Source: Pecten maximus | Taxonomy: Eukaryota | NCBI RefSeq assembly: GCF_902652985.1 | Contig: NC_047016.1 | Location: 32,302,001 to 32,366,000 of the forward strand | DNA length: 64,000 bases | Reading direction: 5' to 3' | In this document: piece after piece, positions 26,851 through 62,873 of the stretch | How the letters are laid out: each line of letters begins with the position of its first letter | Numbering within the stretch: position 1 is the stretch's first letter | The notes under the pieces: generated by a model | Database searches by the model: none | Seen by the model: only the letters and a program-made list of their open reading frames with translations | Told to the model about the DNA's origin: nothing | Translations under genes and position numbers: made by a program

Positions 26851-27096
26851 ATGGTCCGTTTTGTTCTTCAATCACTTCTAGTTGTCCTGTGTGTCTGTGT
26901 GACGTTTGTCTTTGCTGACTACTCAGGATACGGCCACAATGGATATGAGAAAGGAGGCGGACAACACAATATTTTATTTAAGTTCTGTACGGCCAGGGCC
27001 GTTATTACCAATATTTAAACCCATCTTCCTATCATGAGTTTAATTAACATTGTAGTACTTTTGATTTGAACAGCGGCAACGGCTCCACTGTTCTCT
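26851..27096 (+). pseudogene. Gly/Tyr-rich family member A, frameshifted
   Basis: Acceptor ataacag|taaacaacATG; MVRFVLQSLLVVLCVCVTFVFA-DYSGYGHNGYEKGGG, stop at 27018 after 55 aa; a shifted frame gives LYGQGRYYQYLNPSSY and later DLNSGNGSTVL|gtaaat, like the exon ends of the paralogs. Confidence 0.6.
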
Positions 27097-28589
27097 GTAA
27101 ATATATGAGGTGGTTAGTAACTTAACACATACTTAAACGTGCTTGATTAATGTAAAAAAAAAAAAAATTATATTTTAATATCTGCTTCCGAAATGGTCTC
27201 TCATTTTGTTTAATTTTTATATTCACAAATAATTGTTTTACTTTGCCGAGTACTTATAGCAATGTATATCTATAACACTAATATTTATGTGTGTAACCAG
27301 GCTAAGGTTTGTGCTCTTATAATCAACATTTGGGCCACGATCGCTCAGCAAGTCGACATTCGACATTCGACCAATGGGCGCCGTTATAATTGTGTCTCTT
27401 GGTAAGAAGATTTTTTATTTATTTTTTATATATGCATGCGACACATGTTGTTCAGAGAAGAAGGCAATATCATTTTCGCTAACCAGTAGTGTTGAATACA
27501 ATTTGTTTTTTGAATGTGTTCAATACAATGCTCTCCTTTACCAATGAAGATACAATGTACTAAAACTAGACCCAATCTTAACATGCCCCTGGCTGTTCAC
27601 AGGGCGATTAATACTGCAGTCAATATTTCACAGTCATAAGTTTAAATACATCAGTATTTCTCTAAAAAATATCAATGCTATTTGTTAGGAAGAATGAGAA
27701 ACATAATATTAGTTGAAAGGAAATTATGCTTAAGAGTTTATCAATAAAAACAAAGCGACATATTAAAGAATATGTTTGTTCATACTTTAATTTTGAGTTA
27801 GAAGTATGTTTTTTGTATTCTCTTCTGTAATTCTAGCTAAAAATCGATAGAAGAGGGCAAATATACATAGACGTTAAATATATTTGCTCGGAGACCCTTG
27901 AAAAAGGGAGAGCGCCTTCTGCTACATGCACGACAACCGTCGCACAAATCTAAGTTTAAACTGGGTTAAGTCACATTCTCAAAACAAAAAAACAAGGTGA
28001 TGACAATGGAACCACTAGGGCATTCCACAAGCATGAATGGGCAAATTTAAAAGTATATAATAATCCTGATGGAATATACCCATTTCAATTTGTATAAGCC
28101 TTTCTATTAGTTGTCCTCCCAGTGGGCATGTTATCATTAAAATCAACATATTTACGTCTGAAGGCCACCACGTTTGTACCAGGAAGTTGTCGTTCCCGCT
28201 GGCAATCACGTTCGTCAATGTAGGTCTTCTGTCACCTATAGAAAATGAGGCTAAATTGCCAGCAATCTAGACAAACGTGTGGTCTTTGAAACTTCGCCGC
28301 TGTGTGTTAGTTTAACTAAGATCTTCATACTGATATAGATCATTTTAAAAAGACTGTAAATTGTAACTTTGTTAATTAAAAGATTCGGTGAAAATAATGT
28401 GTACCCTATTTATAATATCCCAGTGTACGAACGTACAAGAAAGGTTTGTATTAACCATGTATGCATATACCAGACTAAAAAATATTAAATTGGATTGTAC
28501 TGTATTCCCTACACACAACAGTGTGTTAGTTATACCATTTACAAAATAATGTCATTTACTTCATTGATAATGTAAAATAAGGTATATCA

Positions 28590-29200
28590 TATACCATAGA
28601 AAATAAATTGTAATTTATGCTTTCCAGAATTTTTTTTTAATAGATACCATACAGAAAATAAATTGAAATTAATACCATACAGAAATAAATCGTAATCAAT
28701 ACCATACAGAAAATAAGTCATAATTGTTACCAAACAGAAATAAATTCTATTTAATATCATACAATAAATAAATTGAAATTAATATCACGAAGAAAATAAA
28801 TTGTAATTGATATCATAAGGAAAATAAATTTCAATTGACACCATACAGAAAGAAATTGTAATTTACACCATACAGAAAATAAATTTGAAATTATACCATA
28901 CAGATAATAGATTATCAGTGATACCATACTGAAAATAAATAGTGATTAATTGTATTCACTAACAAATTGCAATAATAAAATCACACTGAAAAATTGTAAT
29001 TGATATCATACAAAAACTATATTGTATTTGATACCATACAGAAAATATATTGTACATGTAATTGATATCATACAGAAAATATTTTAAATTAATATCACAC
29101 TGAAAAATTGTAATATATATCATACAGAAAATATATCATATTTGATACCATATAAAAGAAAATATATTGTATTTGTTACCATACAGAAAATATATTGTAA
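28590..29200. repeat. About 28-bp AT-rich satellite (ATACCATACAGAAAATAAATTGTAATTG)
   Basis: About 20 diverged tandem units ending in a 14-bp stem-loop. Confidence 0.88.
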
Positions 29201-30744
29201 TCGATATGTCAAGAGTCTTTACGTCTTTGACATATCGATTGATTTTAGATTAATTTCACTTTTTTTTCATTTACATGACGGTAATTTGTATAATCACGTA
29301 ACCATATTCACGAAGAAATAAACAAAAACCCACAAATCGTTTTCCCTCTAGTTCAGACACAACAGAGACACGTCTCATATGAATAAGGTCATTTTACGAT
29401 AATGTTGCTGCACAATCGTTAAAAATGTGATATTGTAGAAAGGCGTGTTGTTTGTTGAAATAAATTTATGATTTTACATTCTTATTTTCAAACAAAAAGC
29501 TAGATATCAGATCCTTAAATTAATTGTTTTGGACTACAACGGGGAGGAAATTATGTCGGTGCGCTCAAAAGTGTTTTATAGGTATCGTTTTTAAAGCAGC
29601 GTCCCGCAGACTAACTTATATGTTTCTGTCAATAAACACTGTTCAGTGGCCTGTTCGTTGATGCGGACAAACCGGTTTGTCAAATTTTTATTGCAACATT
29701 TCTTGCATAAATTTTGATAGACCTGCAAGTATTAATACAGGCCTTTTTGTGTTTGAAATTGTCGAGTATGACTCTAGGATATAAGATAAATTGTAATATA
29801 ACCAATTTGGTGACCATTTTTATGTTTTGAGAATTGATGCCTGATCATAGCTGTCTGACTTACCTAATTTACGAAACAACCGGAATCCACATTTCTCTCT
29901 CTTTCTCTTTCTTTCTTTCTTTCTTTATTTCAAACATTGTTAAATTATATATTCATATAGAGTTTCTTGTTTAAATGATTGAAGGTATATGAAATCCATC
30001 CACCATCTCGATACATTTGTATCAATTTTCCTAATACATTTGTATCTTTTCTGATTACTTAGGACTCCGTTAGGTTTAAAAGTTGAGTCCAAACACATCT
30101 GAATTAAGAGTGTTACATCGTTGACTACGAGCAAAGATCGATTGAAAACAGCCTATAATGTTGGAGTTGATTAGATAAACTCTAATGAAAGACAAATTAT
30201 TTCTGTTAATACAGACAATTTTAGGCCCTTGGTACCACTGACGAGCCCCCGAAGGATGAAAACGTTGTTTAATGCTAGAGAGGTTATCTTTCGAATATAA
30301 GATTTTACACTGAAAATATAGTTGATACCTTTCTAGGAATGACGAGCTCTAGCTCATGTTTGGTCAGAAGCATAGTATGGCGAAGGTGAACCAATTTTGT
30401 ATAAATGATAAGTCTGGCCCCCTGAGGCCTTAGGGGCGGGGCCCCAATAACAAAGTATTTCAAATTCTTTGAAAATCTTCTGTTTGATTGACAGTATTCG
30501 GTCTTAATGTATTCTAAATCATCCATAAGTAAAGGGAATTCAATTATATATAATAACCTCTATGTAAGTATTGGTCTGTAACTGTCTGTCTGCGGACCTT
30601 GGGGGTAGGGGCGCAATTCAGGAAGTTTTACATATTCTTTTATAAAAAAAAAAACTCTGAATGACTGACAGGATTTTTTTTTCGCGGGAGCCCCAAAGGG
30701 ATGATAAATATGTACCAGTGCCTACTTAACACATTTACAGCGAC

Positions 30745-31450
30745 TTATAAAGTTTTGAATATTTTCATTATACTGTTCGGCATATCAGGGTTACCATAAA
30801 GTAAAACATTAGCATGGTAGACTGGAGGTAGGTTTCTAAAACATTCCATTCTTATATACTGGTAGTTAGAACACTGCAGAAGGAAGTGTTCTATAGCCTC
30901 ATCAGATTGGTTACGTGAACACAGAGGAATGTTTACAATATTACGAGGGTATAAATAATTGTTTAGAGAGCTGTAATGTGTCCTAAGTCGTACGTAGTGC
31001 AATCTGACAGTGTCAAGTTTTACAATGATAATAGTATAGGTGGAAATTGGGGTATCACCGTTAAGGATTTTTTTAAAGACTAGTAATAGACGGATTACAT
31101 TTTATGACATTGGGGAGTGCGTTCCATATATATGTCAACAGAAGGGGGTAGGGAAGAGTCTTTATGGAGATTAGCTTGGCATGGAAGTTAATAGCTTTAA
31201 AGGTTCGGCTCTTATTGTGTTATAGGAGTGAATGTTAGTTAGGCTTCAAGCTGAATGCATTTTAATAACTGACATTGGCCTAATGTTATATTATCCCAGA
31301 CAATATCTTCATATTCTAGTAAAGGTCTTGAGGTTTGAAGAGATTTTCTATCAATGCTAAAGAGATTTCTTAGAAAACAAAGTTCTTTTTAGATTTACTA
31401 ATAAGATGCTGTAAATGATCAGTCCAATTTCCGTTGGCTGATAGAGTGAT
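30745..31450 (-). mobile_element. Decayed 3' fragment of a non-LTR retrotransposon ORF2 (CR1/L2 group)
   Basis: Minus-strand remnants WTDHLQHLISKSKK, RPLLEYEDIVWDN, and C-terminal HYVRLRTHYSSLNNYLY...PLCS...EAIEHFLLQCSNY; frameshifts and stops. Confidence 0.8.
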
Positions 31451-32863
31451 ACGTAGGTGTTTATTACACGTGACTTCCGTTAATGCGATATTGTTCGTAA
31501 ACAAGGAGCGATGAATCGGTGTTTTTTTTTCGCTTACAGTCATTGTTGCGGGTTTTAAATGGTTTAAGTGAACAAGCCATGTGTTTGACCATTTGTTAGT
31601 TTTGTAAGTTTGTCATTTAAAAGATCAGCGCTCAGATCCGGGATTCCGCTATGGCATACGGGGATGTGTCATTCGTAAATTATCTAATGATGCAAATGAT
31701 ATTACTAACAATGCCGTTGATGATCCTTGAGGAACAGCTGCAGTTACATAGGCTAAATGGAATTGTCTACCATTAACTACAACACGTTGACAACAATTAT
31801 TAATTTAATTTGAGAACCAACTAAAGATATTTCCGGTTATACCGAAAGATTTGAATTTGGACAGAAGACCTCGACGCCGAATCCGGTCAAGCGCTTTACT
31901 TATGTCATAGAATACCAATTTCGCTACCTTTATCAATGTAAGAAAATTGGTACCTTTGATAGAGTATACATGTATATATTAGTACGATATACAAAGTAGA
32001 CCAAAACTGTACCATAAAGCTGTTTCGTCCTTCTAGGAAGTAAAAACTATATATAGGAATCAGGAAGAGAAGACGAAAACAGCGATGGCCTTAGCAGATG
32101 TTAAAATACACTAGAGGAGGTACTTTGTAAGTTTCAATTTTTGTTTCATTCGACAGTTGTTTCAGAAAACATGAAACGTGTGTGTATTTAAACTAGTGCC
32201 ACTATTTATAAGGATATGATATAATCCGCACTTGTCATTTGAAAAATAGACCACAACCTTTATATTTGTTTATTATATATCACGGACGCCCTATTACAAA
32301 TATGTAGAGTTCCGTACGGTTTTTAAAAATGAAAGACACATATTTTTATAATAACTCAAATAATTTATTTCAAAAATACATAACATCACAAAATATAAAA
32401 CGGGGCATTTGGTGACACATATGACGGTTTGGTCCTCTTGCGTTAAAAGCTGAAATGATAAATAATTATATTACAATAATAAAAAAAATGAATATATAGA
32501 TCGGTGAAATTGATAGATAGGTAAATAAATGAATATAATTGATTGTTATCGATAAACCTTCAACCTTTTCATTAGAATATCTCATAAGGAGTATAATCAT
32601 TATTTTACAACAGAAATAGGTAAAATATGGTGTAGAACATATGCTTATGCAAATACTTACAAATATATTTATTGCAACAACATGAATCTTGATTATAAAA
32701 AAGTGAAAAAGTAGTTCATATCATTTATCTTCGGATCAGTGTTTATATGTATGAAAAAATTATATTCTAGGTACATGCATATGGCATTTAAGACATACAC
32801 TTACAAGTGGAGTTTGATACTTACATATATATACAAAGATAGTGTTGTTCTATTCCATCTTGT

Positions 32864-33583
32864 TTAACCGATTCTGCTACTGGCGCCGGTGGCAAGCAGC
32901 CACAGGAGGAATCCAAAGCCAACTGCAAGGACAAGAATAACACTATGTAGCATCGTCGCATTAAGAGAAAGTACCTTTCACAGTGGAGTATTTGTACATT
33001 AGAAATCAAATGCATGTATAACTTACCATGCGTCGTGTTTTTATTGCTTTAAATGTAACTTGATATTTTTCATAATTTATTTTGATATTTTCCTTAATAA
33101 TGACACATTTTACAGAAAACAGTGTCATTAAAGACTTTCAAAATTTGCTTTGGATTATAAAATTTCTTATCAATACTTACTGACGGCCCAGAGGGAGTCT
33201 CTGTTGGTACCGCCATACAGTCCATTTTGGTCTAGGCCAAGGGGTGGAGCGATTGGCGGAACGCTTATGCCATACGGTACGTTCATGGCATAAGCGCTCC
33301 CACCGTATCCTCCTCCGCTCCCACCGTATCCTCCTCCACTCCCACCGTATCCACTATATCCGCCTTTCCCTCCGTACCCTTGCATCCCGGTATATCCCTG
33401 GCCGTATCCCTGCATCCCGCCATAGCCCTGGTCGTAGTAACCCTGTCCACCATATCCACCACTGTACATTCCACCGTAGCCGCCATAGCTACTATACCCG
33501 CTGTATCCACCATCACACGTGACCATCGAGAACAATCCACAGAGGATCGCCCCGGAGGCGATTGCTATAAGTAGCAAACGCAT
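32864..33583 (-). CDS. Gly/Tyr-rich protein B with signal peptide and C-terminal hydrophobic anchor; join(33583..33181,32922..32864), 153 aa
   Basis: MRLLLIAIASGAILCGLFSMVTC-DGGYSGY...VPPIAPP...RDSLWAV|IGFGFLLWLLATGASSRIG*; donor gtaagt at 33180, acceptor ccttgcag at 32923; 3'UTR intron 32824-32450; AATAAA near 32368. Confidence 0.88.
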
Positions 33584-33945
33584 CTCGTGACCTGCGATGT
33601 AATTTATAAGACATTATAAAAAAAAGAAAATATTTGTTTGAATAATGAAAGTAAATATTTTGCATTAGTTTTGTTGTTATTTTGACAATAAAATATATTG
33701 TTACGAATATGCTATGATCATGTAATAACATGTTCACGCGTGTTAAGTTTACACTCTTGAGCTATAATGATAAAATCTCAGTAACTTGGAACTAAGTGTC
33801 GTTTCAATATTAACCACGATAAGATCGTTTCAATAAAAAATATCTCAAGAGATGAAATAGACATTTGAATAATAATTAGCATTATTTACACACCAATAAT
33901 AAACTATTGTATGACTGGGTTTATAAGAGGTATATAAACTATTGT

Positions 33946-34529
33946 ATGACTGGGTTTATAAGAGGTATACACCGTTACTTACCCCTACGATACAGGACCC
34001 TGACTGCTAGATGAGGATATGACTGGGTTTATAAGAGGTAAACACCGTTACTTACCCCTACGATACAGGACCGTGACTGCTAGATGAGGATATGACTGGG
34101 TTTATAAGAGGTCTACACCGTTACTTACCCCTACGATACAGGACCCTGACTGCTAGATGAGGATATGACTGGGTTTATAAGAGGTATACACCGTTACTTA
34201 CCCCTACGATACAGGACCCTGACTGCTAGATGAGGATATGACTGGGTTTATAAGAGGTATACACCGTTACTTACCCCTACGATACAGGACCCTGACTGCT
34301 AGATGAGGATATGACTGGGTTTATAAGAGGTAAACACCGTTACTTACCCCTACGATACAGGACCCTGACTGCTAGATGAGGATATGACTGGGTTTATAAG
34401 AGGTATACACCGTTACTTACCCCTACGATACAGGACCGTGACTGCTAGGTGAGGATATGACTGGGTTTATAAGAGGTATACACCGTTACTTACCCCTACG
34501 ATACAGGACCCTGACTGCTAGATGAGGAT
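33946..34529. repeat. 8 x 73-bp near-perfect tandem repeat containing the exon-1 splice donor of gene B
   Basis: Unit starts at 33946, 34019 ... 34457; minus strand atcctcatctagcagtcagggtcctgtatcgtaggg|GTAAGTaacggtgtatacctcttataaacccagtcat. Confidence 0.95.
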
Positions 34530-34583
34530 CCCGTCCTGTTGAGGGATTCTGATTTACTTGATGTGGAGGTCGTACGTTTTATA
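34494..34583 (-). promoter_or_regulatory. TATA box and non-coding exon 1 of gene B
   Basis: TATAAAA at 34583-34577, Inr-like atcaga about 30 nt downstream, donor gtaagt at 34493; acceptor cgcag at 33592 precedes the ATG. Confidence 0.7.
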
Positions 34584-36420
34584 CTCTGACCTTAAACCAT
34601 TTCATGCAGGATGAAACTGAACAACTTCCTCCTGGTGTATCATCTACCCCCAAGGGCTCATCTTGTCCATCCGTCATCTCTGGGACCATCCGAACTCCTC
34701 ATATAGTTACTTCAACTCTTGACCTAAATTATTTCCTTGGTAACAGCTAAGCGTGCGTGTTAAGGAGGCGGGACTTAGCTACACTGGAAGATTGATTGTA
34801 TAGTTAATAGACAGAAAGACAGAGTGTGTGGTGGAATACACAAGGGCATAGCTTTATTCTATTGATATGATATAGGTAATCATATTTTGATAATCAATGA
34901 ATTACTGTCCAATGAAAGCATATAATGTTAATAATTACCGCAAATTTACAACTATTCTGTTGCATATATTATCGGGTTGAATGTGACAAAGTATTAACCG
35001 TTGCTGGTTGGTAACTTCCTACGTCATGTTCTTAAGCTTCAAGTATCTTTGATAACGCAGTGATTTAATTCAACATATTCAAATGATATTCAATACTAGT
35101 ATATCAAAGGGTTACGTACAAGTTCGTACAACTTACAAAGCCTTTCCCAAACTTTACAATACACAAAAAACAAAAGATAGCACTTGGTGATACAATTGTA
35201 AACAAATACAAGTACTCACTATAAATATTAATATTCTTCCTACTGTAGAAAAGAAAAGAAGGCGCTGGAACTGGAGAATAATAAGAACGGGTTGCTCTGG
35301 TTGCCTAGGTTGTCCTCTAATTAGTTTCGAAACTTTCTGCTGATTTAAAGAACCTACAGTCAGTATGATCAATTTGACAATAAGCTAAATCATCAATACT
35401 TCGTTTATGACTATTCAGTTTTTTGTTATGTTAAATTTTGTTTTTGTTTTGTTTTTGTTTTTTTTCATGCCCCGCATCCTCCCATTGAAGTCCGTCGATT
35501 TACAGTTCAGACGCAACGGCAGTGACAGTTTTGTTTTTACTATATAAATTCAGCACACGCCGAAGGTTTTAATCAAAAACATATTTAACACTTTAACACA
35601 ACAGCTGAAATTGCTGATAAAGTTGCGTTTGATTTCTTTTTGTCAGTCACAGAGTCATTAGAATACGACATCAAGGACTTTATCACATATTCCCATACTG
35701 TATTAACGCACAAGCTTTTTTTTCATCTCTTGAAAATATAATTAAATTAAAATTCTTTGAGTTCCCCTTGATTATCACATTTGTTTTTACTCGTATTGCC
35801 GAATATACCAATGTTTCACCCTTTACACTCGTAGAAAACATAATTATCTTTTCATATTTCAAGAGATATATAACAAACTGTTTAATAAGATATCGTTAGG
35901 TAACTAGTCGGAAAACATAATTTTTTTTTTCTGACATATATATTATGCACGGGAATTACCTCCACATGGATCTTAATCTTGATCTTTAATGACAAGATAA
36001 CTACACAATTGTTGTATAAAGGACATTTAAGTGGCTGTGAGGGACTATAATGATAATATTTATACTGATTATGTTTGCTTTTTGTTCTGCCTTAACGTAA
36101 TTCAAATATTGTTGTTTACATATTTTATCAATACAACAATCTTAATGTCACATATCACATCTAGTCATCTATCACGTGGATTATACCACAAAAACAAAAA
36201 CTGATTTAATGTCAACCATTGGTTGTTTTACACCTTTGATAATGGACCACTATACGTATATACATAATAGCATCGTATTTGGTCTCACGGCCTGATAATC
36301 GAACTTGTCACGAACGACTGATTGGTCAGTAAAATGATGGATTATCGGACACAGGAAGGGCTACGCATGGAAATAACAGGAAACTGGTTGACCTAGTTGT
36401 CCGCATCCTCAGGGCCGCCA

Positions 36421-36488
36421 TATAAAAGGTCGGTTCTGGCATAGAACAGGGTATCCTTTACAGGCCGGTCTCCACCAAAGGATCACAG
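36421..36488 (+). promoter_or_regulatory. TATA box and non-coding exon 1 of gene C
   Basis: TATAAAAGG at 36421, then about 60 nt to cacag|gtacat at 36489. Confidence 0.7.
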
Positions 36489-36749
36489 GTACATGTACAT
36501 TATACTATCTATAGCGGTTGAATTGTCTTTTCTTTACAGAGTACTAATAACTATAAAATGATAAAAAGTAATGCAATTAATAATTGAAAGAGGTATACGT
36601 GTAATTATTTTTACCTTATGGCGAAATATCCTTTTCGGAACTATAACACAGAACTGTTATGCGTTATGACCAAAACTCCGAAATACAATACAAACTTGTA
36701 TAATGTTTAACTTTTCTATCTCATAATTCTTTTGATAACAGTTTTCAAC

Positions 36750-37908
36750 ATGAGGTTCGCTTGTGCGGTTCTCGCCTCACTGGCCTGCCTCTCGGTAGCG
36801 ATGGGTGACGGTTACGGAGGTTCCTATTATACGGGCCAGAACATGTAAGTAAACAAAAGTAGGATCTCTTGTAAAGTTTAGAAATACTGAAATATCATGA
36901 TTTCCTATTACTGTTATAACAATATCGTCTTATTTTATATGTTAATGGTTTATTATATATATGACCGTCTATAATACAGAAACATTATCCCCATCATTTG
37001 AAGTATATATTCAACAATTTACTAAAAGTGGTGTTGTTTTTTTATATTTGTATCATCGAATGATGTATATTTTGTTGCTCATTCGTAACATTTGGCTGAT
37101 CTTTGAAAAGAAAATCAGAGTGAGGGGAAACAGATGAATAGCACTTATTAAAAATAGACAGGAACAAGGCTTCGTGTGTTGTTTTTGATTACAGTTAAAT
37201 GTGATTATAACGAATTCAACGGGCTCAGAAAAAATAAGTTTGAAATCAATCCGGGATTTTAATTTACTGCTAATAAGAAGAATTCGTATCAAGCCTGTTT
37301 GTTTATGGGAAGTGTTGCTGTATTTTATCAATAGGTACAATGGTTACGGAAAGGGAGGTATGGCTCCGGTCTATAATTACGGCGGATACGGTGGATATGG
37401 AAAAGGAGGAGGCTACAGCGGATACGGTGGAAGTGGTGGCGGATATGGGGGCGGATATGGTGGTTATCCAACACTACTTTACCCTGTTGCCTCCCCAGAA
37501 CCAGCTGATATCCCGTTGGGAGCCCTTGGAGGACTGTACGGCGGCGGCGGTGGCGGCGGCTACGGAGGAGGAGGAGGATTATTTAGCGGCGATGGGAGCC
37601 TACTTCTTCTTTTGGGAGGTAAGTACTGGTACAAGGCATATACTCGTCCGCAATGCTATCCCATATTTCATGCATTCAATGCTAATTTATAACAATAAAA
37701 CCACAATGTAAGAAAATTATTTTCCTTTCTCGCCACCGTAGTATTCTACCATAGTGCTGGATATGTAATCAAGAAAATGTTGTATTGCTTCAGTAATTAT
37801 ATTTACTTGTATGTGTTTAAACGTTAACATAATATGTAATATGTCGTTTTGGCTTGATTTTCAGGAGCTATACTGCTAATGGCTCTCTTGTCCAACAACA
37901 CTGGATAG
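36750..37908 (+). CDS. Gly/Tyr-rich protein C; join(36750..36844,37335..37618,37865..37908), 140 aa
   Basis: MRFACAVLASLACLSVAMG-DGYGGSYYTGQNM|YNGYGKGG...YPVASPEPADIP...DGSLLLLLG|GAILLMALLSNNTG*; all junctions GT-AG and in phase; 3'UTR intron 37941-38382. Confidence 0.88.
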
Positions 37909-39136
37909 ACAAACACAACGGGAGACATATTTGTATATAGGTAAGTTATTTTTCTGATACCATGTCAGACATATACGTTAATACTTGAGTTGACCTCTCT
38001 TGTCGTCATTATGCAATGTGGCATACTCTAGATTTGACATAGATTTACATGGGATGTCGTTGATTAAATCTTTCCGAAACACCAGCTTTTGTTCTAATTA
38101 GTTTTTTTCCAATTACCTCATTGCTAAGTATGTATTTTTTTATCGACTTTGAGTTATATTTCCGATTTCAAGTCTATATCATTTATTCACAGTTGGTTTC
38201 GTTTTAATCATTTCATTTTATGTCGAATATATGAATTGCTTCTTTTATCGATACCACTTTATATATTATGATCAGCTTTACAGATACTTGCAGCTTATGT
38301 ATTTCTTAATGCGCAATGTATCAATTTGCATTTATAATCAAATCTTGCCTATCTAATATATATATATTTTACTTATTTATAGGTTTTCGCGCAAGAGGTC
38401 AAACACGTCATTTACAGTTAATACCAAAAACCCCTGTGTATTTTTGTCATTAAATTATTCTTCGTTGATACCATCAAATTTGTGTTTTGTTGTTGCTGTA
38501 GTCACAGAAGTCTTTCACCAAACATATTTTCAAGCTTCAAACACAGGACAAAAAAGAACTTCACGAAGTATTTGTCTTTCTTAAGTCCTTTCTCAAAATC
38601 GGAAAACAGTTTAAATAACAGACTCGAATGAATGCATTACCGTCATTCAGGAAAAAACTTTGTATTCATTTTGCAATGCAAAATATAGATCAATATGTAA
38701 TACAATGTATAGCAGGTTTGTACATCTGTTATCTGTGGACCACTTGTACCGAAATATAACCAGTTTGTAAATTATGGTATAAAATAGCTGTTACAGAGAG
38801 CAAAATACCAGCGTGTATTCTTAAATGGTAACACAATCTAAACGAATTTAGATGTGGTATTTTACAAGATAACGTTAGTTCTCGGAGGATCGCCAAGGGA
38901 GTGTATAAAAACACAGAGTTCAGTATAACACCACAACGTGATAAGATTGACGCATTATTTAAAGTACAACATTATAACATATTATATACACTAATGATTA
39001 ATATATAACTACATCATACGGCTGTTTGTCCTTAATAAGTCTTAGCAATGGAAAAAAACAGAAATAAACAAAATCAAAAACAAAACAAAAAACCAAAACA
39101 AAACCTACGACATGTTTTTGTAAGTATCCACGTATA

Positions 39137-51360: not shown

Positions 51361-54300
51361 ACGATAACATTCACCACTAAGGTTCAAACATACAGTAATA
51401 CTAAACACTTACAGTTAGTAACATCATACATTCTCACAGCAACAGTATATGGTCAGTTGGAAAGGCGTGTATCGGGTAGACTGTTATTACTCTAACGTCA
51501 CATGGATATCATGAGCCACTTAAATACGTATTACTATATTTCCTTTCGCTCTGCATTACTGCTGTTTAAATGCTTGATAGGTGAATTTACCCTGTTTTAA
51601 GACTACGTATTTTTATATTGTTTGTTTAGTCAATTTTTTTCTTGTATATTTTTTTTCAGATTCCTTATCAACAAGAACCTTTGAAGATATTGATCTGATA
51701 TGTTCTACCGATTGGTAAATTGTTGAATAAATTTTATAGAAGGGTTTTGGTTGTTGTTGATTTTTTTTATGAACTATTTTGTAAAAAAGTAAACACATCA
51801 TGTATCTTCTACAGTTTCATGTCTCTGATAAATGTTAAATTTATCTAAGCTCTGAGGAAATGCATCTCCTTCCTCCTTCCATAAAATCATAATAATTTTT
51901 TTATTCTATAAGAAAGCTCCGCCGACTGGATAATGATTGGAAGAGTCAATTGTCAAGCGCCACCTAGCGGAACTACTTCTTTTTTATGAATGGAATTCCT
52001 GTGTACTATTGTTTATGTAAACGTAGTGTGTACGGCTCACTGTCCTTCAATGTTGTAAAAAAGGGAACTGCAGCAACGTTAAATATCTGAATATATTTTA
52101 AAAAGGTGGAGAAAAAACAATGGGATTGTCATGATAAAAACATATATTTTAGCAGATGTTGAACTGCAGACTTAACTGGGCCTAACATCATCAAAACAAA
52201 ACGTCGACTGCTTAAATGTTTGAGTTATGCATCCGACGTTTTAGAATACAGAATGTAAACAATATACGTGGAACGTACGCAATATGCTATCCGGCAGTAC
52301 CCTTACTTCCACTGACACACACATGTGCACGGCATCCCCGTTATATTCCAATACTGGTCATGACATACGATGTTTACAAAAGACTTGACCAATTCCTGCT
52401 CTACGTGAGGGACTCCGGTTAATTCATCACTGGCTACTTATTAATCGGAGTCAAACAATACGAATTTACATCCTCTAGTTTGTTGTGTCTTCCTCGTTTT
52501 GAAACTGAAAACTTTTGTTTTGAAAGTGAAGACACCCAGAGTCGCGAGTCAGCTTTCCGTGACGCCACGTACGTCCCACAAGAGGCCATGGAAGGGACAT
52601 TTGAACGTAGTGACTTGTCCAAAAATAATCCGCAGTTCGATTATTGACTTCGTGGATTTATGCATCGGTTTTTGTTTTTCCGTTTCAATTAAGAAGTTAA
52701 TTACAAGCATTGACGTCAATATTTTTAAAAGTTTTATAAAGGTATGCACAAAAAATTGTCTGCAAACTTTCGTAAGAATCCGCTACGCTACTGCTGAAGA
52801 GTCATAGAGGATCTGATAGAGGCATGGCACAGACTTACTTATATTTCGTCATGATGCTTTATGTAATCCTTTCACTTAGACATTGTCTGAATGTGTCATT
52901 TTCGTAGTTACCCTTTGTACAGCCCTTTAAGAAAACGTATCGCATTTTGTTACTCCATCCATATCCATTGTTAAATTTTAATGCTGAAATGCATAGGTAC
53001 AATAATTCAAAATCAATATGCATGTAAACATATAAAAATATGGTAAAAATCAAAAGAGGAGTCATCGCTGGAATCCTATAATAAATCTATGGTGAAAACA
53101 CTAATTTATTCTTGTAGATCAGGTCCACCCTTTTCTACCCTATCTCCCGTTCTAATCAACATGTTTATTGGTATAACAATACACATGTTAATTTGTATAT
53201 CACTAATGCATTTTACAATTTCAAATGAGAGAGGTTAATATAGAATTTCGCCAATGGTCCAATTCAATTGATGTAGGTAAGCGTAAACCTACATGCAACA
53301 GAGTATCCGTTTTTGCTGAAAATTCAATTATTCTACTCTTGGAATTAAGGATGCGTTTTTCTTCATTGAAATGGATATTTACTGCCTCTTGATAGTTTTA
53401 AAGGCTGCACATCAATCCTAGCCAACAAGATTCACGAATATGACATGGCTTCAATTCTCTTTCTTTTTCACGTTTATTTATTTTTCCCCCTTTTATTTCT
53501 TTACCTGAAAGTTGTGGTCTCTGTGTCTCATTGGTTTGCTTCTGTTTCATTTTCGGAAAAAATGACTACATCAGATATGAAGAATAGTCACATAAAAGAA
53601 AATCATACAAAGTCATTACAACATAACAACATCTGATACTTGACCATCATCAATATACGATGAAAGAATAATTTAATCAAACCCCTGTTTCCATTGATTG
53701 TGTATATATTGAGATAATGATATTCCCGGAAGCACGTCTCACATCATCGATCACCTTGCTAATTCGTGAGTACATGTAGGCGGATGTCTGTTATTAATAT
53801 CTGTCACACTGTTAGGTCCGTACCTACCTACTGTTTGATTGTTATAACTTTTTTTGTATACAATACTGTATTATTGATGATATTCGAGGGGATACAACTT
53901 TGTTATGTAATCGATCAGTAACGAAAGCATTAAACTAAATACAAAGTGAATATTTATACCATGGATTATGAGTATAAATGATCAGCCTTGATACACACAA
54001 ATGGTACACTAAGTGTATTGGCTTGTTTACTTGTTAATTAAAGTAAGTAATTGAGGCATGCTCCGCGAGTTTACGACCAGGGTAGCAACGTAATATTAGT
54101 GTCAGGAAATCAAAAATAAATCTAGAGCGGTTATCTGATGGACTTTCTTCAAGAACCGTAATTTCTTTATAACATTACAGACTATCCTTAATCCTGACAT
54201 ATTCTAATTTCAAACTTTAAGAAAGAGATATCTAACTGTAGATGAGAGTATGCCTAAGGCGATCGGTCAGTAATACATACACACTGTATTAATGATGGTC

Positions 54301-55635: not shown

Positions 55636-57196
55636 TTTTTTTAGTAAGCTGGAATCAGGTTTGGTCGTCCGATTCAAACTTTCGCGTTGTATATATGGTT
55701 ACTGATAAACGACCATGTTACTGTAAAACAAAACATATAAAGCAAAGTAGTTAATACGAACAATCAATGCATGTCTCTCACGTGATAACATTTTGTCGCC
55801 ACGTCAGACAAGACAAAATCATGTAAAAGCATATTAGATTTACACTTAGCTTTAGTTCAATGTTGATATAATCTTTATCTAAACTTTATAATGTTTCGAC
55901 TGAATCTTTCACAAAGCATTTTTTTTAATATATATTTCAGTTCCTATGTAAAAAACGGACATTTCGCCCCTTAGTAATCAAACTAAAGATCTACTGTCAA
56001 TGTTTTGGTGATTTTGATATTAGCGTGTATTAATACGCTTCTTTAACACTTATGCTATAATAGGCTAAGCATGAGTAAAATAAAATCGGTTGTTTTTTAC
56101 GTAATCAATACAGGCATATATATCCAAGAAAACCACTATTTCGTTTTCGCTCTTGTAAGAATCTTGATTGTTGTAGTTTGCTTCGAATTTTTACTCATCG
56201 AGGTAGCAACACATGTCAATACCTTATAACAGGTTCTAGTGATATAGGTTGATAGATTATTTTACGCACACACCGCTAAGATGGTATTAACTATTGTTGA
56301 CCTATGACTTCAGAGGTCAATATGAGATACACACGGCTTCCTTATAGAGTGGGATGTAGGTGGACACATCACCAGCGGTGTATGTACATAAAGGGTGCTG
56401 GTGGTACAGCCATTTTGGAAGGTAGGGTCAAAACTTATCTATAGCGTCATGATATTGAAATTATACTTGTATAATTATGCTTGTCTTGGCAATTGATATA
56501 ATTTAGCAGGAGTTTTGGGTTTCACAGGATAGGTCCATCAGGTAAGGTATTTTATATTCCAATTATACATTACAATCAGCCTGGTCATGAAGTGTGTATA
56601 GATATCGTTTATTAGCATATGGAAATGATATGCATTCTTTTCAATTGTGAAAATTCAACCATCGCGATCGCTTGCTATGTATATAAGTCATGCTAACATA
56701 ATAGCATGCTTTTTGCTACCGAAATCGAAATAATTTTGAAGCCGATTATTTTCTATTCAAATTAAGTATCGTTAAGCTACTGGCAAATCTTAACTTCGGA
56801 GATTTGTTTGGAATCTTAAATCGTTGTAACAGTAAGTTAAAAGCTTAATGCACATCTGGCTGATGTTATTCGAGACCTTTTTTATTCATTCATAAAATAA
56901 TTATCATTACGTCAATACTAAAATGTTTAAAATATAATATATAATGTCTGATTATGTCTTTTTTGTATTAAATAAAATACCCATTTGCTGCCATAATGTA
57001 GTTTTATTCTATTATGTTCAAAATATTATGTAGATATTCCCCAAGGTAAAAGGGCGTTGTGTATAATCATCAAGATATTCCAATATATTATCTTCTTGTG
57101 TTTCTGTGATGATTGTTTTCATCTATTCTGTATAAAAATATAAAGATGATTATTTAGATATATTTGAAACATCTAACTCTTCTGTTTAGAAGTACC

Positions 57197-57737
57197 ATGA
57201 AGCCGGTCACAGTTGTAGCCTTTGTTCTGGTGTTCTATGTGGTGGGTGGATATTGCCGTGGGTATAAAAACCAATATGGCAGATACGGAAACAGCATGTA
57301 CGGTTCAGGCTATAATGGCGGTCGTGGTTACGGAAATGGCCAAGTTTACGGTTTCCAACAGACGGGTATAGACATGCCTCCAGTCCCTCCACCATCTACA
57401 GCTTACAGAGACCTGATCCTCATAGGTGGGTACACGTTGACCTACTTTTGTAGTTAGTCACAAAGTTAGACTTCCATACTAAAACTACAGTCGTAGATTT
57501 CAGATAGAAATCACTTTATAAAACAACTCTTAATCTTTGACAGAAAAACTCTAAAAATGAAATCAACAATTAAAAAAAAGTAATAAAAAAGGCTATAAAT
57601 AGATGAATAAATAATGAACACTAATGTTTTTGATTGATATATGAACGATGTTCCATTTGGATTTACGTGTTTCCTTTTTCATTGCAGTCATGGCCATAGG
57701 TCTTCTACCTTTACTGGCGACAAATGCTTTCGGCTAG
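57197..57737 (+). CDS. Gly/Tyr-rich protein E; join(57197..57425,57688..57737), 92 aa
   Basis: tttag|aagtaccATG; MKPVTVVAFVLVFYVVGGYC-RGYKNQYGRYG...MPPVPPPSTAYRDLILI|VMAIGLLPLLATNAFG*; 3'UTR intron 57783-57916; AATAAA at 57992. Confidence 0.85.
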
Positions 57738-59329
57738 ACATTGAAAACAACCAAATAAACTAAAGTACAACACTTGGTCTTTGTAAGTATGGTGAGGTCA
57801 CTTTGATAAATTTTACGTCAAACAATAATAATTAGGAAATGAGATTTACGAATTAAGTCGTCGCCATGCAGTCGTTTCAATTTGACCTACATAATCTGTT
57901 TTCTCTACATTTCCAGAATATTCCTATGCAAGCAAGAACGACACGGAGAGGGGATCCAAACCTTATTGTAATTTAATTGATAATGGCAAGACAATAAAAT
58001 CGTTTGAAGATTAACTCATGTTTTTTATTAAAAAGCCAAGCACACACTTTCTTATAACATGCATACTTAACTGTACTTTTACACGTTGATATTCCTGATG
58101 ATTACTCAAGCTTCGTTACTGAGAACGCACCATTACCTTACTTTTACCTATGGATATTCCGGATGATCACCCAGGCTTCCATACTAAGGTGCAAAGTTAT
58201 CAGTACTTTTAGTTTAGTATAGTCATTAGTTTGAATAGTTAACAGTATTAGTAGAGAGTTAAAGTATAACAGCAATGTTATTGTATTGCTCTCTGTATCA
58301 TTTGTTTGTATAGTTGTTGGTGTTATTAGAAATTAACAGTTTCGTTAGAGGTTTATAAGAAAGGGTATTATTATTGTTACCTGTGTTATTAGTGAATTTT
58401 AGTTTGCATTTATCTTAGTGAATTCTTAGAGGGCTGTAGTTAACAATATTTACTACATTTGCTGAAATCGCAGATTTTTCATATAGCAGTGTCACTGTAT
58501 CTTGCTTTATTGATGTGAACGTGAGAAGTGTTCATTTCTTTTGAATCAATATTATTCATATAACACAATGAGAAAAAAATTAGTATGTATAGAATAAAGA
58601 GTTTCAATATATATGTAGACAGCTTGAAGAAATATGAGGACAAAATATGATTTTTTTTTGGGGGGGGGGGGGAGGGTATCTTTACTCTCTTCTGGTTAGT
58701 CAGAAGTACATCACGTGTCGGTTGATAAAAACATATATTGACTTAAAGATAATGCAAAAAAAAACTAATATTCACTTTGGTTGCGTGCAAGTACAGAATT
58801 GATTAGTTTGAGGACAATAATTTATATACATTTATTGGTTTGAGGACGATACATGAAATTATTTATAAAGGACAATATATGAACTTATTGGTTTGAGGAC
58901 AAAATATGAATCTGTTGATTTGAGGACAATAAAAGCATTTACTAGCTTGCAAACAATAAATAAATTTATTTGTTTTGATAAGCAGTTTATTTTCTAAGCA
59001 AAAGCAATTCAAATTCGATGTAATATTGAAGTTGTATTTGCCTTTTGTTCATTATTGTATATTCATGCATTCATGAGAAAGGGGAGTTTTACTTAAATCA
59101 TAATTACTTTATATTCAATGTTACCTTTACTTACAATGTTACTTATTTGGCTTCCGAAACCAAATGTGTAATCAGTTGAACACGACCAACTTATCACAAA
59201 TTACTAGATAGCTGCCGGGATGACGTATCCAACACCTCCTGAGTTAGGGTCGTCAAAGCAGCTGTACAAGACTGACTTAATCAAACTTTTTAGGAATAAA
59301 TATTACTCATTACGCCTTCTTTGGTTAAA

Positions 59330-59910
59330 TCATTCAACTTTAACATATTACAACGCCTTCATCGGGTTAAGTTACTCAACTGTAACCTATTACAACGCCT
59401 TTATCAGGTTAAATTGTTCAACTGTAACCTATCACAATGCCTTCATCATCACGTTAATTTATTCAACGATACCTTATTACAACGCCTTTAGCCTACCATA
59501 CCGCATTCATCAAGATACTTTATTTAACTTTAGCCTATAACATAGTCTACATCAGATTGAAATATTCAACTGTGACTTATTACAACGCTTACAGCAGGTT
59601 TATCATTTCATTCGTAACTTAGAGTTGTATTACAACGCCTTTATCAAGTTTCAACTTACTCGGGTTAACCTTTTTAACTATAACCCTTCGCAAGGACTTA
59701 ATAGGCTTAACTTTTTTTCAACATAACTTACCACAAGTTCAAATGATCTAACTCTTACACATTACAAAGTTTTATACGAAAAAACGTATTTAACTTTAAC
59801 CTATTACGAAGTCTTTATTTTGTTATCTTATTCAACTATAACCTCTTACAATGGCTTTATTAGATTATTTTTAAACTATAACTTATTACACCGTCTTTAT
59901 CAGGTTAATT
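59330..59910. repeat. About 43-bp diverged minisatellite (TATTACAACGCCTTTATCAGGTTAAATTATTCAACTGTAACC-like)
   Basis: Recurrent tattacaacgcct and ttcaactgtaacc. Confidence 0.75.
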
Positions 59911-60887
59911 TTTCGAACTTAAAACACTCAAAAATTCAAAGAGCATAATTAATGGTAAATTAACGTCACTTCACCAGATAAAGATAATCATCAAAATCAA
60001 CTTATGACACATAGTTAATTTATTCTTTATTGGATACTTTGAATGGTGATGTTTTTTATAAATATATACGTGTTAATCGTCTTAACCCCTTATGTAGGTG
60101 AGAGACGTCGTCTTGCAACGTTTGCTACCATTCGCCGAATATGCTTAACACAAGCAAATACAACAAGAATCATGACACCATGCTTTATTCGACAAAAGCT
60201 ACATCTATAAACAACCAATGCTGAAAAACACACTCAGGGGTCTTTGGTAACAGCCAAGATGTCTTGCGCTCGCGTTAATTATCTAAAAGAAAAGACAGAT
60301 AACTATAAGTATTATATACACCATGTGCAAAAATTGTACAATTTCTATAGATTTAAAGTCATACGTTACCACCATTCAAAAGTCACATGTAAAAAGCTTG
60401 TATGAAATATTGAGATATAAAGCTCTTCAGTATGCGCAACGCCAGCTGTTTAATGTCATTTCAGGGATTCAAGAAAAGAAAGCTAATTTACAAGTAATTT
60501 TCCATAAGTTAGTATATAATGAATCGATTTTATATTACATCTAAAAACGGAGTATTGTATTTGTTTAACATTATTGTCCTATCCTTGACCATCCTTGATG
60601 CTCTTAAGGAGGCGTAATATATCTTTAGATAAATTGCAATGATCACTTAAAAAAGATTTGGCAAAAGCTTTACTTATGTTAATTATCCTATCGGCTTATC
60701 AAAAACCAGCAAAACAAAATAATCCGTAAAGGATCATTTTGAGTCTGGTTTTATATTGCCAATTATAAATTGATATGATGTCCTACTGCTTTGTCTGGTA
60801 GATATTGGACCCCGCAAATCAATCTGATTTGTGCGATAATTAAGTTATCATACTCACCCGTGGTCAAAATGGATTGATGCATTATTC

Positions 60888-62145
60888 CTATCCTGTGTTG
60901 TTATTGTTTAACAACAGGAGAAGCAGGAGGAAACCCCCAACTGCAAAAATCAAATATTGGTTTTATAACCCATTCAAGTTAATTTTAACAGGGGCAATGG
61001 TACAACAGAAATAGTTCCTGTTGTAAATAAGCCCAAATTACGTGGGGAAAAATGCACCATAAACCTACCGAAATCTACCAACGGAAGTCATCAAATTTTA
61101 TGGATTTTCATTCATCATACTTGGTGATCAACACATGTCACTTACAGGGCTCCGTACTTATGGCTACCCGTACTTCCGGTGTTGATATTCATGTTGAAGC
61201 ATAACAATATGTTACACTTAATCAAATAACTTTTTGAATATATTTAAATTTGGAATACCTATTTGATGTAAATAATAAGGAAATGTAATGTTTCATGGAT
61301 AAACAAGTATTTAGAATGTGTCATTTCTTTAATACGAATTAACCATTCGATCTCGGGTAGAGTCACCTGTGGAAATCGTGACATTGGCTCTCAGCAGAGT
61401 GGACTTTATGAAAAAGGCATGCATTCTTTAAAATAGCAAATGATGAAAACTTGAGTTTTATTACAGCAATATAATTCATATTCAATAAGCTGAATAAGAA
61501 ATATTCATATTTTTTCTGAGAGCATTACTCGGTTTTGTGGAGCAGCGCGTGACCCTTCCAGGTGCAATAAGTTGGCAGGATAAAGGCTAATTCTTTGTCT
61601 AAAGATTGATTTGTGTTTGGCATATAAATCCATGTTGATATCATTTATAATATTCCAAAGTGATCTTTCTTAATATGTTACGAATATTTTCTAGTGACTG
61701 AAGTATAGTTCGGGGTGGTCTAGAAGCATATTGCCAACTAATCGATCGGAGATAAGGTACATCATGGATGACTTTACTGCCTTACGTTATTTATAATTTA
61801 ATATTTGAATATCATATGTTAGTTATACTCACGGTAAAGCAATGTATTGTCATTGTTGTTTTCGGCATAAGCAGCACCAGCGATGGCACCTGGTGGTGGG
61901 CCCGCGGGGTAGGGTATGTAAACCGCCCTATTGGTCATTTCATACCCCTTTCCGTGGTAGCCTTTTCCGTATCCCCCATATCCACTTCCGTAGCCTCCAT
62001 ATCCTTTTCCGTATCCCCCATATCCACTTCCGTATCCCCCATAGCCACCGTAGCCCCCATAGTCCCCATATCCTCCATCCCCGAGACAGCTGCCCAGGAA
62101 TGCCAGAAAGGTCAAGAACGGCAGAGCTATGATGGCAAACTTCAT
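60888..62145 (-). CDS. Gly/Tyr-rich protein F; join(62145..61833,60940..60888), 121 aa
   Basis: MKFAIIALPFLTFLAFLGSCLG-DGGYGDYGGY...IPYPAGPPPGA...NNNDNTLLY|LGGFLLLLLLLNNNNTG*; donor gtgagt at 61832, acceptor tttgcag at 60941; 3'UTR intron 60857-60283; AATAAA near 60186. Confidence 0.88.
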
Positions 62146-62812
62146 GCTGATCCTAATATTTTTTTAATTAAAAAAAGTGCATGTGAGCGTATGTTCGTTG
62201 TTTCGTCATAATCAGATGGATACACATGTACATACCAACCACAACTTTTTTATGGAACAATAATCCTGTATCCCCGATGTATTTCTGATTTATATTCGAC
62301 GCCCAAAATATATCATATAGGTAAAAGGCCATGTCCAGCCACAAATTGCTTCAATATTTGGGAATTAAAATCAGCAATTTCTTTGAACTTAAACATAAAG
62401 ATTGTAATACTGGCATATGTGTATAAGACAATTCTTATCAACGTTTTGTGATGGTCGTGATAAATTCGTCACATAAAACCGTAAATAAAGTATGATAAGT
62501 TTGGGTTCTATGAAAATCATAACAAAACGGTTCAGTAATGTACCTCTGATGTCAAATATACCTTAAAACTAAATATTTACGACCACAGTTTACCGTATTA
62601 TCTAGATAGAGTGGTAAACAATAATTTAACGAACCAAATTAAAAACCTTCAGACGTTATAAAAGACAAAATAATATATGTTCAAAAACACGTCTTAAAGT
62701 TTACAGTATGTTTGTATGGTGATCAAAATCCGGATCAGATACCTTGATGAAAATTAGAATGTACATGGAGATCACTTAACAAACACTGATCCCAGTAAAT
62801 ATAATACCTTAC

Positions 62813-62873
62813 CTTGCCACTGACCGCACTGCAGTGTGGATGAAAAGTCTGTGTAGCAACGGGTTTATATATA
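62813..62873 (-). promoter_or_regulatory. TATA box and non-coding exon 1 of gene F
   Basis: TATATAAA near 62871-62864, then ...gtggcaag|gtaagg at 62812; acceptor attag at 62153 precedes the ATG. Confidence 0.7.

What the first reader, a model, noticed from the sequence alone, without database searches (positions are those of the whole stretch)
26851..62873. Cluster of six small Gly/Tyr-rich protein genes with a hidden, separately encoded C-terminal membrane anchor
Seen: genes B, C, E and F splice through a phase-1 intron to a tiny exon that completes a hydrophobic tail ending in Gly-stop: SLWAV|IGFGFLLWLLATGASSRIG*, SLLLLLG|GAILLMALLSNNTG*, DLILI|VMAIGLLPLLATNAFG*, TLLY|LGGFLLLLLLLNNNNTG*. 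D starts the same tail (GLIAAFG|) and A is a relic. All have a signal peptide and GGY/GYG(K) repeats; B-F also have a Pro-rich linker. Established: molluscan Gly/Tyr-rich matrix proteins such as shematrins are secreted and end in basic RKKKY-type tails; Tyr/Lys-rich proteins are substrates for tyrosinase or peroxidase cross-linking; a hydrophobic C-terminus without a charged cytoplasmic tail is the pattern of GPI-attachment signals. Inference: a family of cell-surface-tethered (GPI or type-I TM) cross-linkable proteins that could anchor epithelium to shell, periostracum or byssus, or be shed by cleavage. ORF-level annotation would miss the anchor.
Basis: partly seen in the sequence, partly recalled or inferred. 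Interest (0 to 1): 0.85.

Follow-up and report, generated by a model that had tools for sequence, protein, structure and literature searches.

The report
Scallop Gly/Tyr-rich proteins with spliced-on anchor
The king scallop carries a family of at least 17 small secreted glycine/tyrosine-rich proteins. Their hydrophobic C-terminal tail, probably a membrane anchor, is finished by a separate mini-exon that is spliced in real transcripts and conserved across scallops, but what the proteins do is untested.

Summary
The window is Pecten maximus chromosome DNA. Genes B, C, E and F each end their main exon inside a hydrophobic run at a phase-1 GT donor, and a 74-98 nt mini-exon completes it. RNA-derived contigs from four studies show exactly the predicted B and C junctions.

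- The mini-exon is the penultimate exon; a non-coding exon follows it.
- D has a candidate tail exon of its own.
- A is only a 55-aa ORF.
- The cluster continues beyond the window, and the family has at least 17 genes in three clusters.
- RefSeq models of B and of one paralogue outside the window already include the tail.

Tail exons are conserved islands in three other scallop genera, and the B tail has dN/dS of about 0.11-0.17.

I put a membrane tether of some kind at about 0.7. The type is unresolved. I lean towards a retained single-pass anchor with a 3-9 residue stub, because an Arg flank and a terminal Gly are conserved. A GPI signal is the close rival. Tissue and function are untested, and I found no paper describing the family.

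The parts
26851..27018 (+). Gene A: 55-aa ORF with a signal-peptide-like start and a short Gly/Tyr beginning. It may be a relic or an orphan first exon.
   Evidence: ORF; sequence. No Gly/Tyr exon or tblastn match nearby. No RNA evidence.
32340..32449 (-). Gene B terminal non-coding exon (3'UTR), with AATAAA at 32369. Its first ~60 nt are highly conserved.
   Evidence: A loose end of an X5 contig at 32825 matches 32420-32449. 86-89% identity to Argopecten and Mizuhopecten. Poly(A) signal. The lower end is approximate.
32825..32922 (-). Gene B tail mini-exon (98 nt). The coding part is 32864-32922 and ends Gly-stop. It is followed by a GTAAGT donor.
   Evidence: Joint 32922|33181 in X1, X5 and X8. 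Sequence. Conserved island. dN/dS about 0.11-0.17.
33181..33591 (-). Gene B main exon. ATG at 33583, then signal peptide, Gly/Tyr region, Pro-rich linker and the start of the hydrophobic run.
   Evidence: 100% identical to RefSeq protein P0001.
34494..34555 (-). Gene B 5' non-coding exon. Its 3' end and donor are copied eight times in a 73-bp tandem array at 33945-34529.
   Evidence: Joint 33589|34492 (cut +2) in all four runs. Tandem array. The upper end is approximate.
36449..36484 (+). Gene C upstream 5' non-coding exon. Seen in one run only, and its 5' end is not defined.
   Evidence: Joint 36484|36738 in X8. Conserved block 36284-36491.
36738..36844 (+). Gene C exon with ATG (36750), the signal peptide and the first Gly/Tyr residues.
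   Evidence: Joint 36844|37335 in four runs. Translation.
37335..37618 (+). Gene C main exon: Gly/Tyr region, Pro-rich linker and the start of the hydrophobic run. Phase-1 donor.
37865..37942 (+). Gene C tail mini-exon (78 nt), with the stop at 37906-37908. It is followed by a GTAAGT donor.
   Evidence: Joint 37616|37863 (cut +2) in four runs. Sequence. Orthologous tail exons in L001 and L002.
38385..38494 (+). Gene C terminal non-coding exon, with ATTAAA at 38449.
   Evidence: The loose end after 37942 in all four runs matches 38385-38407. About 85% identity across genera. The upper end is approximate.
49441..49820 (+). Gene D main exon. It has TTG where the paralogues have ATG, so either the start lies in an unseen upstream exon or the gene is decaying.
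   Evidence: No RNA evidence.
50196..50269 (+). Gene D candidate tail mini-exon (74 nt), with the stop at 50228-50230. The tail ends Arg-Asn, not Gly.
   Evidence: Best-scoring acceptor and hydrophobic reading downstream of the D donor. It has a donor-like site after the stop, like the other genes. Inferred only.
57197..57425 (+). Gene E main-exon coding part: signal peptide, short Gly/Tyr region, Pro-rich linker and the start of the hydrophobic run.
57688..57782 (+). Gene E tail mini-exon (95 nt), with the stop at 57735-57737 and a GTAAGT donor after it.
   Evidence: Splice signals only; no reads could be laid.
60858..60940 (-). Gene F tail mini-exon (83 nt), with the stop at 60888-60890 and a GTGAGT donor after it.
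   Evidence: The orthologue P0005 and the paralogue P0006 are annotated with equivalent tails.
61833..62145 (-). Gene F main-exon coding part.

Best explanation
These genes belong to a multigene family found in all four scallop (Pectinidae) genera sampled. The proteins are small (about 90-155 aa) and low in sequence complexity. Each has a signal peptide, a region of 25-44% Gly and 14-23% Tyr with a few Lys, a Pro-rich linker, a short polar stretch rich in Asn, Asp, Ser and Gly, and a hydrophobic C-terminus.

Shown: a conserved phase-1 intron splits the hydrophobic run. An internal mini-exon of about 74-98 nt supplies the rest of the run plus the stop codon, and a non-coding exon follows. The tail is spliced on in transcripts of B and C and is kept by purifying selection.

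Inferred mechanism: the signal peptide sends the chain into the ER. The C-terminal apolar run then holds it in the membrane as a type I anchor, leaving only 3-9 residues (often Arg-first, always Gly-last) on the cytosolic side. The Gly/Tyr-rich, tyrosine-cross-linkable ectodomain would then sit on the outer face of the secreting epithelium. There it could seed or tie down an extracellular matrix, or be shed by cleavage in the linker.

I put a membrane tether of either kind at about 0.7. The retained-transmembrane version is favoured only slightly over a GPI signal.
For: - Splicing: the exact joints appear in contigs of four studies, one of them an oligo-dT RNA library.
- Architecture: the same structure is seen in the 16 family members examined (12 P. 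maximus paralogues, with D only a candidate, and 4 orthologues), with a phase-1 donor inside the apolar run.
- Conservation: tail exons are islands in otherwise unalignable introns between P. maximus, Argopecten and Mizuhopecten.
- Selection: the B tail has dS 0.9-1.15 against dN 0.10-0.19.
- Hydrophobicity: rough apparent insertion energy is -2.5 to +0.7 kcal/mol, with cores of 12-16 residues and apolar-plus-small runs of 15-21.
- For a retained anchor: Arg follows the apolar run directly in the C3 and C2:41 Mb copies rebuilt here, and within the last three to five residues in all four B orthologues and the D candidate. R151 and G153 are invariant in B. The last residue is Gly in every tail but D's, encoded by different Gly codons. 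A cleaved signal would not need either feature.
Against: - No predictor of signal peptides, TM helices or GPI sites could be run. The energy scale and length term were taken from memory and lack positional terms.
- C, E, F and the paralogue P0006 have no basic flank. Their cores of only 14-15 residues contain Gly or Pro, which suits a GPI signal better than a plasma-membrane helix.
- 7 of the 16 members have a small-residue triplet at omega-like distance from the core.
- There are no data on tissue, protein or localisation.
- E, F and D junctions were not seen in RNA.
- Sequence searches found relatives only in scallops, so there is no characterised homologue to lean on.
Confidence: 0.4

Rival explanations
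1. The tail is a GPI-attachment signal. It would be cut off in the ER at a small residue in the polar stretch before the apolar run, and the Gly/Tyr-rich protein would be lipid-anchored on the outer leaflet, from which a phospholipase could release it.
For: - Signal peptide plus a C-terminal apolar run of 12-16 residues, often containing Pro or Gly, preceded by a stretch rich in Asn, Asp, Ser, Gly and Ala.
- Marginal to moderate hydrophobicity.
- No charged residue after the run in C, E, F and P0006.
- 7 of 16 members have a small-residue triplet 7-14 residues before the core.
Against: - 9 of 16 members fail the simple omega rule.
- Most paralogues have Arg at or near the end of the run.
- The invariant terminal Gly and the conserved R151 in B orthologues are unexpected in a peptide that is discarded.
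Confidence: 0.3
2. The hydrophobic C-terminus is not a lasting anchor. The proteins would be fully secreted matrix or defence components, like shematrins or Gly/Tyr-rich antimicrobial peptides. The tail would then serve self-association or sorting, or be trimmed off as a propeptide.
For: - Composition and size resemble secreted Gly/Tyr-rich structural proteins and peptides. NCBI names for members are all of that type.
- The apolar cores are short.
- X1 holds an unspliced contig across the B tail intron (32893-33210). If translated, it would stop three codons after the donor and give a tail-less form.
Against: - An apolar run of 15-21 residues at the end of a translocated chain normally partitions into the bilayer.
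- The unspliced contig has about a quarter of the depth of the spliced joint (25.6 against 109), and X1 also covers other introns and intergenic DNA, so it looks like pre-mRNA or DNA background.
- The tail is conserved at the protein level.
Confidence: 0.2
3. The tails of E and F, and the D candidate, are chance open readings after chance splice-like sites, and only B and C are real.
For: D's candidate tail lacks the terminal Gly, and D lacks an ATG in its main exon.
Against: - The phase, the position inside the apolar run, the mini-exon size and the post-stop donor match those of B and C.
- An F orthologue in Ylistrum and a P. maximus paralogue are annotated with equivalent tails.
- Seven further paralogues outside the window show the same pattern.
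Confidence: 0.05

Closest known systems
Shematrins (and KRMPs) of pearl oysters, Pinctada
   Same: Small secreted mantle proteins with a signal peptide and long Gly/Tyr-rich low-complexity regions thought to be cross-linked through tyrosine (general knowledge; KRMP role as quoted in PMC3120837). NCBI names one orthologue 'shematrin-like protein 1'.
   Different: Shematrins end in a short basic motif and are soluble matrix components. Here the C-terminus is an apolar run ending in Gly, encoded by its own mini-exon. Homology beyond composition was not demonstrable: there is no Pfam model and the profile search found nothing outside the B orthologues.
Classical arabinogalactan proteins of plants and fungal GPI cell-wall proteins (analogy only)
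   Same: Small low-complexity extracellular-matrix proteins built as signal peptide, biased-composition region and C-terminal hydrophobic signal. They are tethered at the surface and then released or cross-linked into the wall (general knowledge).
   Different: They come from a different kingdom, have a different composition (Pro/Ala/Ser/Thr, glycosylated) and are proven to be GPI-anchored. There is no sequence relationship, and the anchor type here is unproven.
MSP130 family (sea urchin, with mollusc relatives)
   Same: A membrane-linked (GPI) surface protein of biomineralising cells with Gly-rich stretches. It is a precedent for tethered proteins in calcifying tissues (PMC11878542, listed; otherwise general knowledge).
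   Different: It is a large folded protein and unrelated in sequence. No link of the scallop family to mineralisation has been shown.
High-Gly/Tyr keratin-associated proteins (Pfam PF11759), and the Gly/Tyr-rich NLP/CNC peptides of C. elegans
   Same: Composition, small size and tandem gene clusters. NCBI names two members 'keratin-associated protein-like'.
   Different: The PF11759 match is below threshold (E 0.042, 14.8 bits against 21.1). Those proteins have no hydrophobic C-terminus, and KRTAPs are intracellular.

Membership tests
Shematrin family | N-terminal signal peptide | tested here: met
   Seen by inspection of the translations: Met, a basic residue, an apolar run, then small residues before Asp-Gly or Gly-Tyr. 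No SignalP run was possible.
Shematrin family | Gly/Tyr-rich repetitive domains | tested here: met
   The mature part is 25-44% Gly and 14-23% Tyr in 16 members.
Shematrin family | Short basic C-terminal motif | tested here: not met
   Every member ends in an apolar run plus 3-9 polar residues, with Gly last.
Shematrin family | Sequence homology beyond composition; presence in the shell prismatic layer | not testable with these tools
   No reference shematrin sequence or scallop shell proteome was on hand. The supplements of PMC5854119 are not held.
GPI-anchored proteins | Signal peptide plus a C-terminal apolar run of about 12-20 residues at or near the end | tested here: met
   Cores of 12-16 residues with 3-9 residues after them.
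GPI-anchored proteins | Omega site: small residues at omega and omega+2, followed by a polar spacer of about 5-10 residues | tested here: inconclusive
   A rule-of-thumb scan found such triplets in 7 of 16 members. No trained predictor was available.
GPI-anchored proteins | Release by PI-PLC and loss of the C-terminal peptide | not testable with these tools
   This needs an experiment.
Type I single-pass membrane proteins | An apolar segment long and hydrophobic enough to span the bilayer | tested here: inconclusive
   Rough apparent free energy is -2.5 to +0.7 kcal/mol. Runs are 15-21 residues when Gly, Ser, Thr and Ala are counted, but the strict cores are only 12-16.
Type I single-pass membrane proteins | Positive charge on the cytosolic flank | tested here: inconclusive
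   Present in the B orthologues, the D candidate and the rebuilt C3 and C2:41 Mb copies. Absent in C, E, F and P0006.
KRTAP high-Gly/Tyr (PF11759) | Pfam match above the gathering score | tested here: not met
   Gene F exon: 14.8 bits against a cut-off of 21.1. The other exons gave no relevant match.

The most novel reading that the evidence does not exclude
Scallops keep a dedicated family of membrane-anchored, tyrosine-cross-linkable low-complexity proteins. These would form the physical link between the secreting epithelium (mantle or larval shell field) and the nascent periostracum or shell matrix. They would act as a cell-surface seed for matrix assembly, with a conserved Gly-ended cytosolic stub and a conserved 3'UTR motif controlling turnover or mRNA handling.
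Probability: 0.15. Interest if true: 0.7.

Novelty: new variant of a known kind. Interest (0 to 1): 0.5.

Why it matters
Gly/Tyr-rich mollusc matrix proteins are treated as freely secreted building blocks. A conserved, expanded family of the same composition that stays tethered to the cell would offer a candidate for a poorly understood step: how matrix assembly is positioned at the epithelial surface.

It also exposes a blind spot. Secretome and shell-protein pipelines commonly discard signal-peptide proteins with a predicted TM segment (for example PMC9168380), and plain ORF calling stops a few codons after the donor. The practical value is limited until tissue, localisation and anchor type are measured. 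The gene models for some members are already public, but they are unnamed and, as far as the open-access search showed, undescribed.

Tried and rejected
- Pfam gave no real family for the five main exons. One of the five was sent in the wrong frame, gene C at 37340.
- A search restricted to the linker plus tail of P0001 returned only itself and the Argopecten orthologue.
- A profile of the four B orthologues against 1.84 billion representatives returned only their own cluster and one marginal hit.
- The ESM Atlas gave scores of 0.82 or less and an unstructured model, so nothing usable.
- The look-up of encoding contigs cannot show the window's own genome. It did give the Argopecten, Mizuhopecten and Ylistrum loci.
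- P0007 comes from a 1,990-nt Logan contig of an unnamed sample. It shows the same linker and donor position, but the contig ends before any tail exon.
- Ten full-text literature searches found no description of this family or its anchor.
- Rfam found nothing in 26-64 kb. RNAalifold found no conserved fold in the conserved 3'UTR block.
- I considered whether skipping the mini-exon gives a conserved alternative reading frame in the last exon. The substitutions between genera there are mostly non-synonymous in that frame, and no skipping joint was reported, so I dropped the idea.
- Home-made insertion-energy and omega-site rules could not separate TM from GPI.
I redid the computation from references.
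- Spliced (joined) protein models were built only inside local scripts, for translation, hydropathy and dN/dS. That is also why SignalP, NetGPI or DeepTMHMM-type steps on the joined E, F, C and D models were left out.

Full report
**What is there.** The window is Pecten maximus DNA, G000 contig C2 32,302,001-32,366,000. Five Gly/Tyr-rich open reading frames lie at 33.2 kb (-), 37.2 kb (+), 49.4 kb (+), 57.2 kb (+) and 61.8 kb (-). Each main exon ends inside an apolar run at a phase-1 donor (GTAAGT, GTGGGT or GTGAGT). Each tail begins after a pyrimidine tract and CAG.

- They carry the joints 32922|33181 and 37616|37863 (which reads 37618|37865 with GT..AG). These are exactly the predicted tail introns.
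- They also carry 36844|37335, which shows that C has its signal peptide on a separate exon, and 33589|34492, a 5' non-coding exon of B.
- All four runs continue beyond 37942 with letters that match 38385 onwards. An X5 contig continues beyond 32825 with letters that match 32449 downwards. Both break points sit at GTAAGT donors 35-40 nt after the stop codon.
- So the tail exon is an internal mini-exon (98 nt in B, 78 nt in C), followed by a non-coding last exon.
- D, E and F have donor-like sites at the same distance after their stops, giving mini-exons of 74, 95 and 83 nt.

**Genes D and A.**
- For D, the best acceptor downstream of its donor opens a short apolar reading at 50196 that ends Arg-Asn-stop.
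- D also has TTG where its paralogues have ATG, right after an acceptor. D therefore either starts in an unseen upstream exon or is decaying.
- A is only a 55-aa ORF with a signal-peptide-like start. Nothing else near it resembles the family.

**Family and conservation.**
- The RefSeq protein of B (P0001, 153 aa) is identical to the exon and already carries the tail. Orthologues exist in Argopecten irradians, Mizuhopecten yessoensis and Ylistrum balloti, with 65-78% identity and a well-kept tail.
- In Argopecten and Mizuhopecten a C orthologue lies head-to-head with B, as in the window, and ends in an equivalent tail exon.
- blastn between the genera aligns only the exons. The mini-exons and, most strongly, the start of the last non-coding exon stand out as islands.
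- In the last 24 codons of B, dS is 0.9-1.15 and dN is 0.10-0.19. The tail is therefore translated and constrained.
- Within P. maximus the cluster continues past the window, with copies at window-equivalent 74 kb and 85 kb (the latter is P0006). Six tandem copies lie on C3 at 28.63-28.68 Mb and four on C2 at 41.05-41.08 Mb. That makes at least 17 genes.
- Wherever a tail exon could be found, the donor is phase 1 inside the apolar run. The tail ends in Gly in every gene except the D candidate.

**What the tail is likely to do.**
- The proteins have no Pfam domain and a confidently unstructured model.
- After the signal peptide comes a region of 25-44% Gly and 14-23% Tyr. A Pro-rich linker follows, then a polar stretch, then an apolar core of 12-16 residues (15-21 counting Gly, Ser, Thr and Ala), and finally 3-9 polar residues.
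- A rough insertion-energy estimate gives -2.5 to +0.7 kcal/mol. The scale was recalled from memory and has no positional terms. The value is enough for membrane partitioning but does not tell a helix from a GPI signal.
- A simple omega-site rule is met by 7 of 16 members.
- Two features argue that the C-end stays on the mature protein. Arg stands directly after the apolar run in the C3 and C2:41 Mb copies rebuilt here, and within the last three to five residues in all four B orthologues and the D candidate. The terminal Gly is invariant across paralogues and genera, with varying codons.
- C, E, F and P0006 lack the Arg and have short cores containing Gly or Pro, which suits a GPI signal.
- I therefore put a membrane tether at about 0.7 and lean slightly towards a retained type I anchor over GPI.

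**Function.** No tissue data could be obtained. The only hint is that a seawater poly(A) library holds spliced B and C transcripts at 99% identity or more. That would fit expression in planktonic larvae, but other sources are possible. The link to shell, periostracum or byssus is inference from composition alone.

**Comparison with known systems.** The nearest known kind is the shematrin/KRMP type of secreted Gly/Tyr-rich mantle protein. The defining basic C-terminus is replaced here by an anchor-like tail, and homology beyond composition could not be shown. In working principle the closest analogues are small low-complexity matrix proteins that carry a C-terminal anchor signal, such as plant arabinogalactan proteins and fungal GPI wall proteins, but there is no sequence relation. 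Ten full-text searches found no paper on this family. One scallop secretome study explicitly removes signal-peptide proteins that have a predicted TM segment, which would hide the family.

**Limits.** Joined exon models were used only in local scripts and never sent to a search tool. Trained predictors for signal peptides, TM helices and GPI sites were not available. E, F and D lack read support.

**Verdict.** This is a real, transcribed, conserved and expanded gene family with a separately encoded hydrophobic C-terminus. It is a new variant of a known kind. The anchor type and the biological role remain open.

Noticed in passing
window 32327-32462 (-) and 38373-38494 (+); L001 11191-11327 and 1680-1801; L002 10922-11064 and 3901-4025: The start of the last, non-coding exon of B and C is 85-89% identical across three scallop genera. 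That is better kept than the coding exons, and it shares a motif between the two paralogues. No conserved fold and no Rfam family were found. It may be a regulatory or localisation element in the 3'UTR.
   Followed up: partly
window 33945-34529: A 73-bp unit is repeated 8 times at 97% identity. It copies the 3' end of B's first exon together with its GTAAGT donor, so intron 1 holds a row of spare donors. Argopecten and Mizuhopecten have a single copy.
   Followed up: partly
G000:C3:28632695-28683263, G000:C2:41049568-41078939, and G000:C2:32375958-32387810: Further clusters of the same family: six tandem copies, four copies and two copies respectively. Wherever the tail exon was found, the phase-1 donor and the Gly-ended mini-exon are the same.
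   Followed up: partly
window 33222-33589, 36748-37424, 37863-37942: An oligo-dT RNA library labelled seawater metagenome (run X11) contains spliced transcripts of B and C at 99% identity or more. This hints at expression in planktonic stages or shed material.
   Followed up: no
window 50556-51362: A 30-bp minisatellite of about 27 copies lies just downstream of D's candidate tail exon. It produces long spurious ORFs on both strands.
   Followed up: no
window 43961-44728 and 45919-46674 (+): Two intronless ORFs of 255 and 251 aa lie between C and D and have no Pfam match. They may be pieces of a mobile element or of an unannotated gene.
   Followed up: partly
window 30745-31002 (-): An 85-aa ORF whose Cys/His-spaced end looks, from memory, like the C-terminal part of a non-LTR retrotransposon reverse-transcriptase ORF. 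Not tested.
   Followed up: no
window 32893-33210: Run X1 holds an unspliced contig across B's tail intron at about a quarter of the spliced depth (25.6 against 109). If translated, it would end three codons after the donor and give a tail-less form. X1 also covers other introns, so pre-mRNA or DNA is the simpler reading.
   Followed up: no
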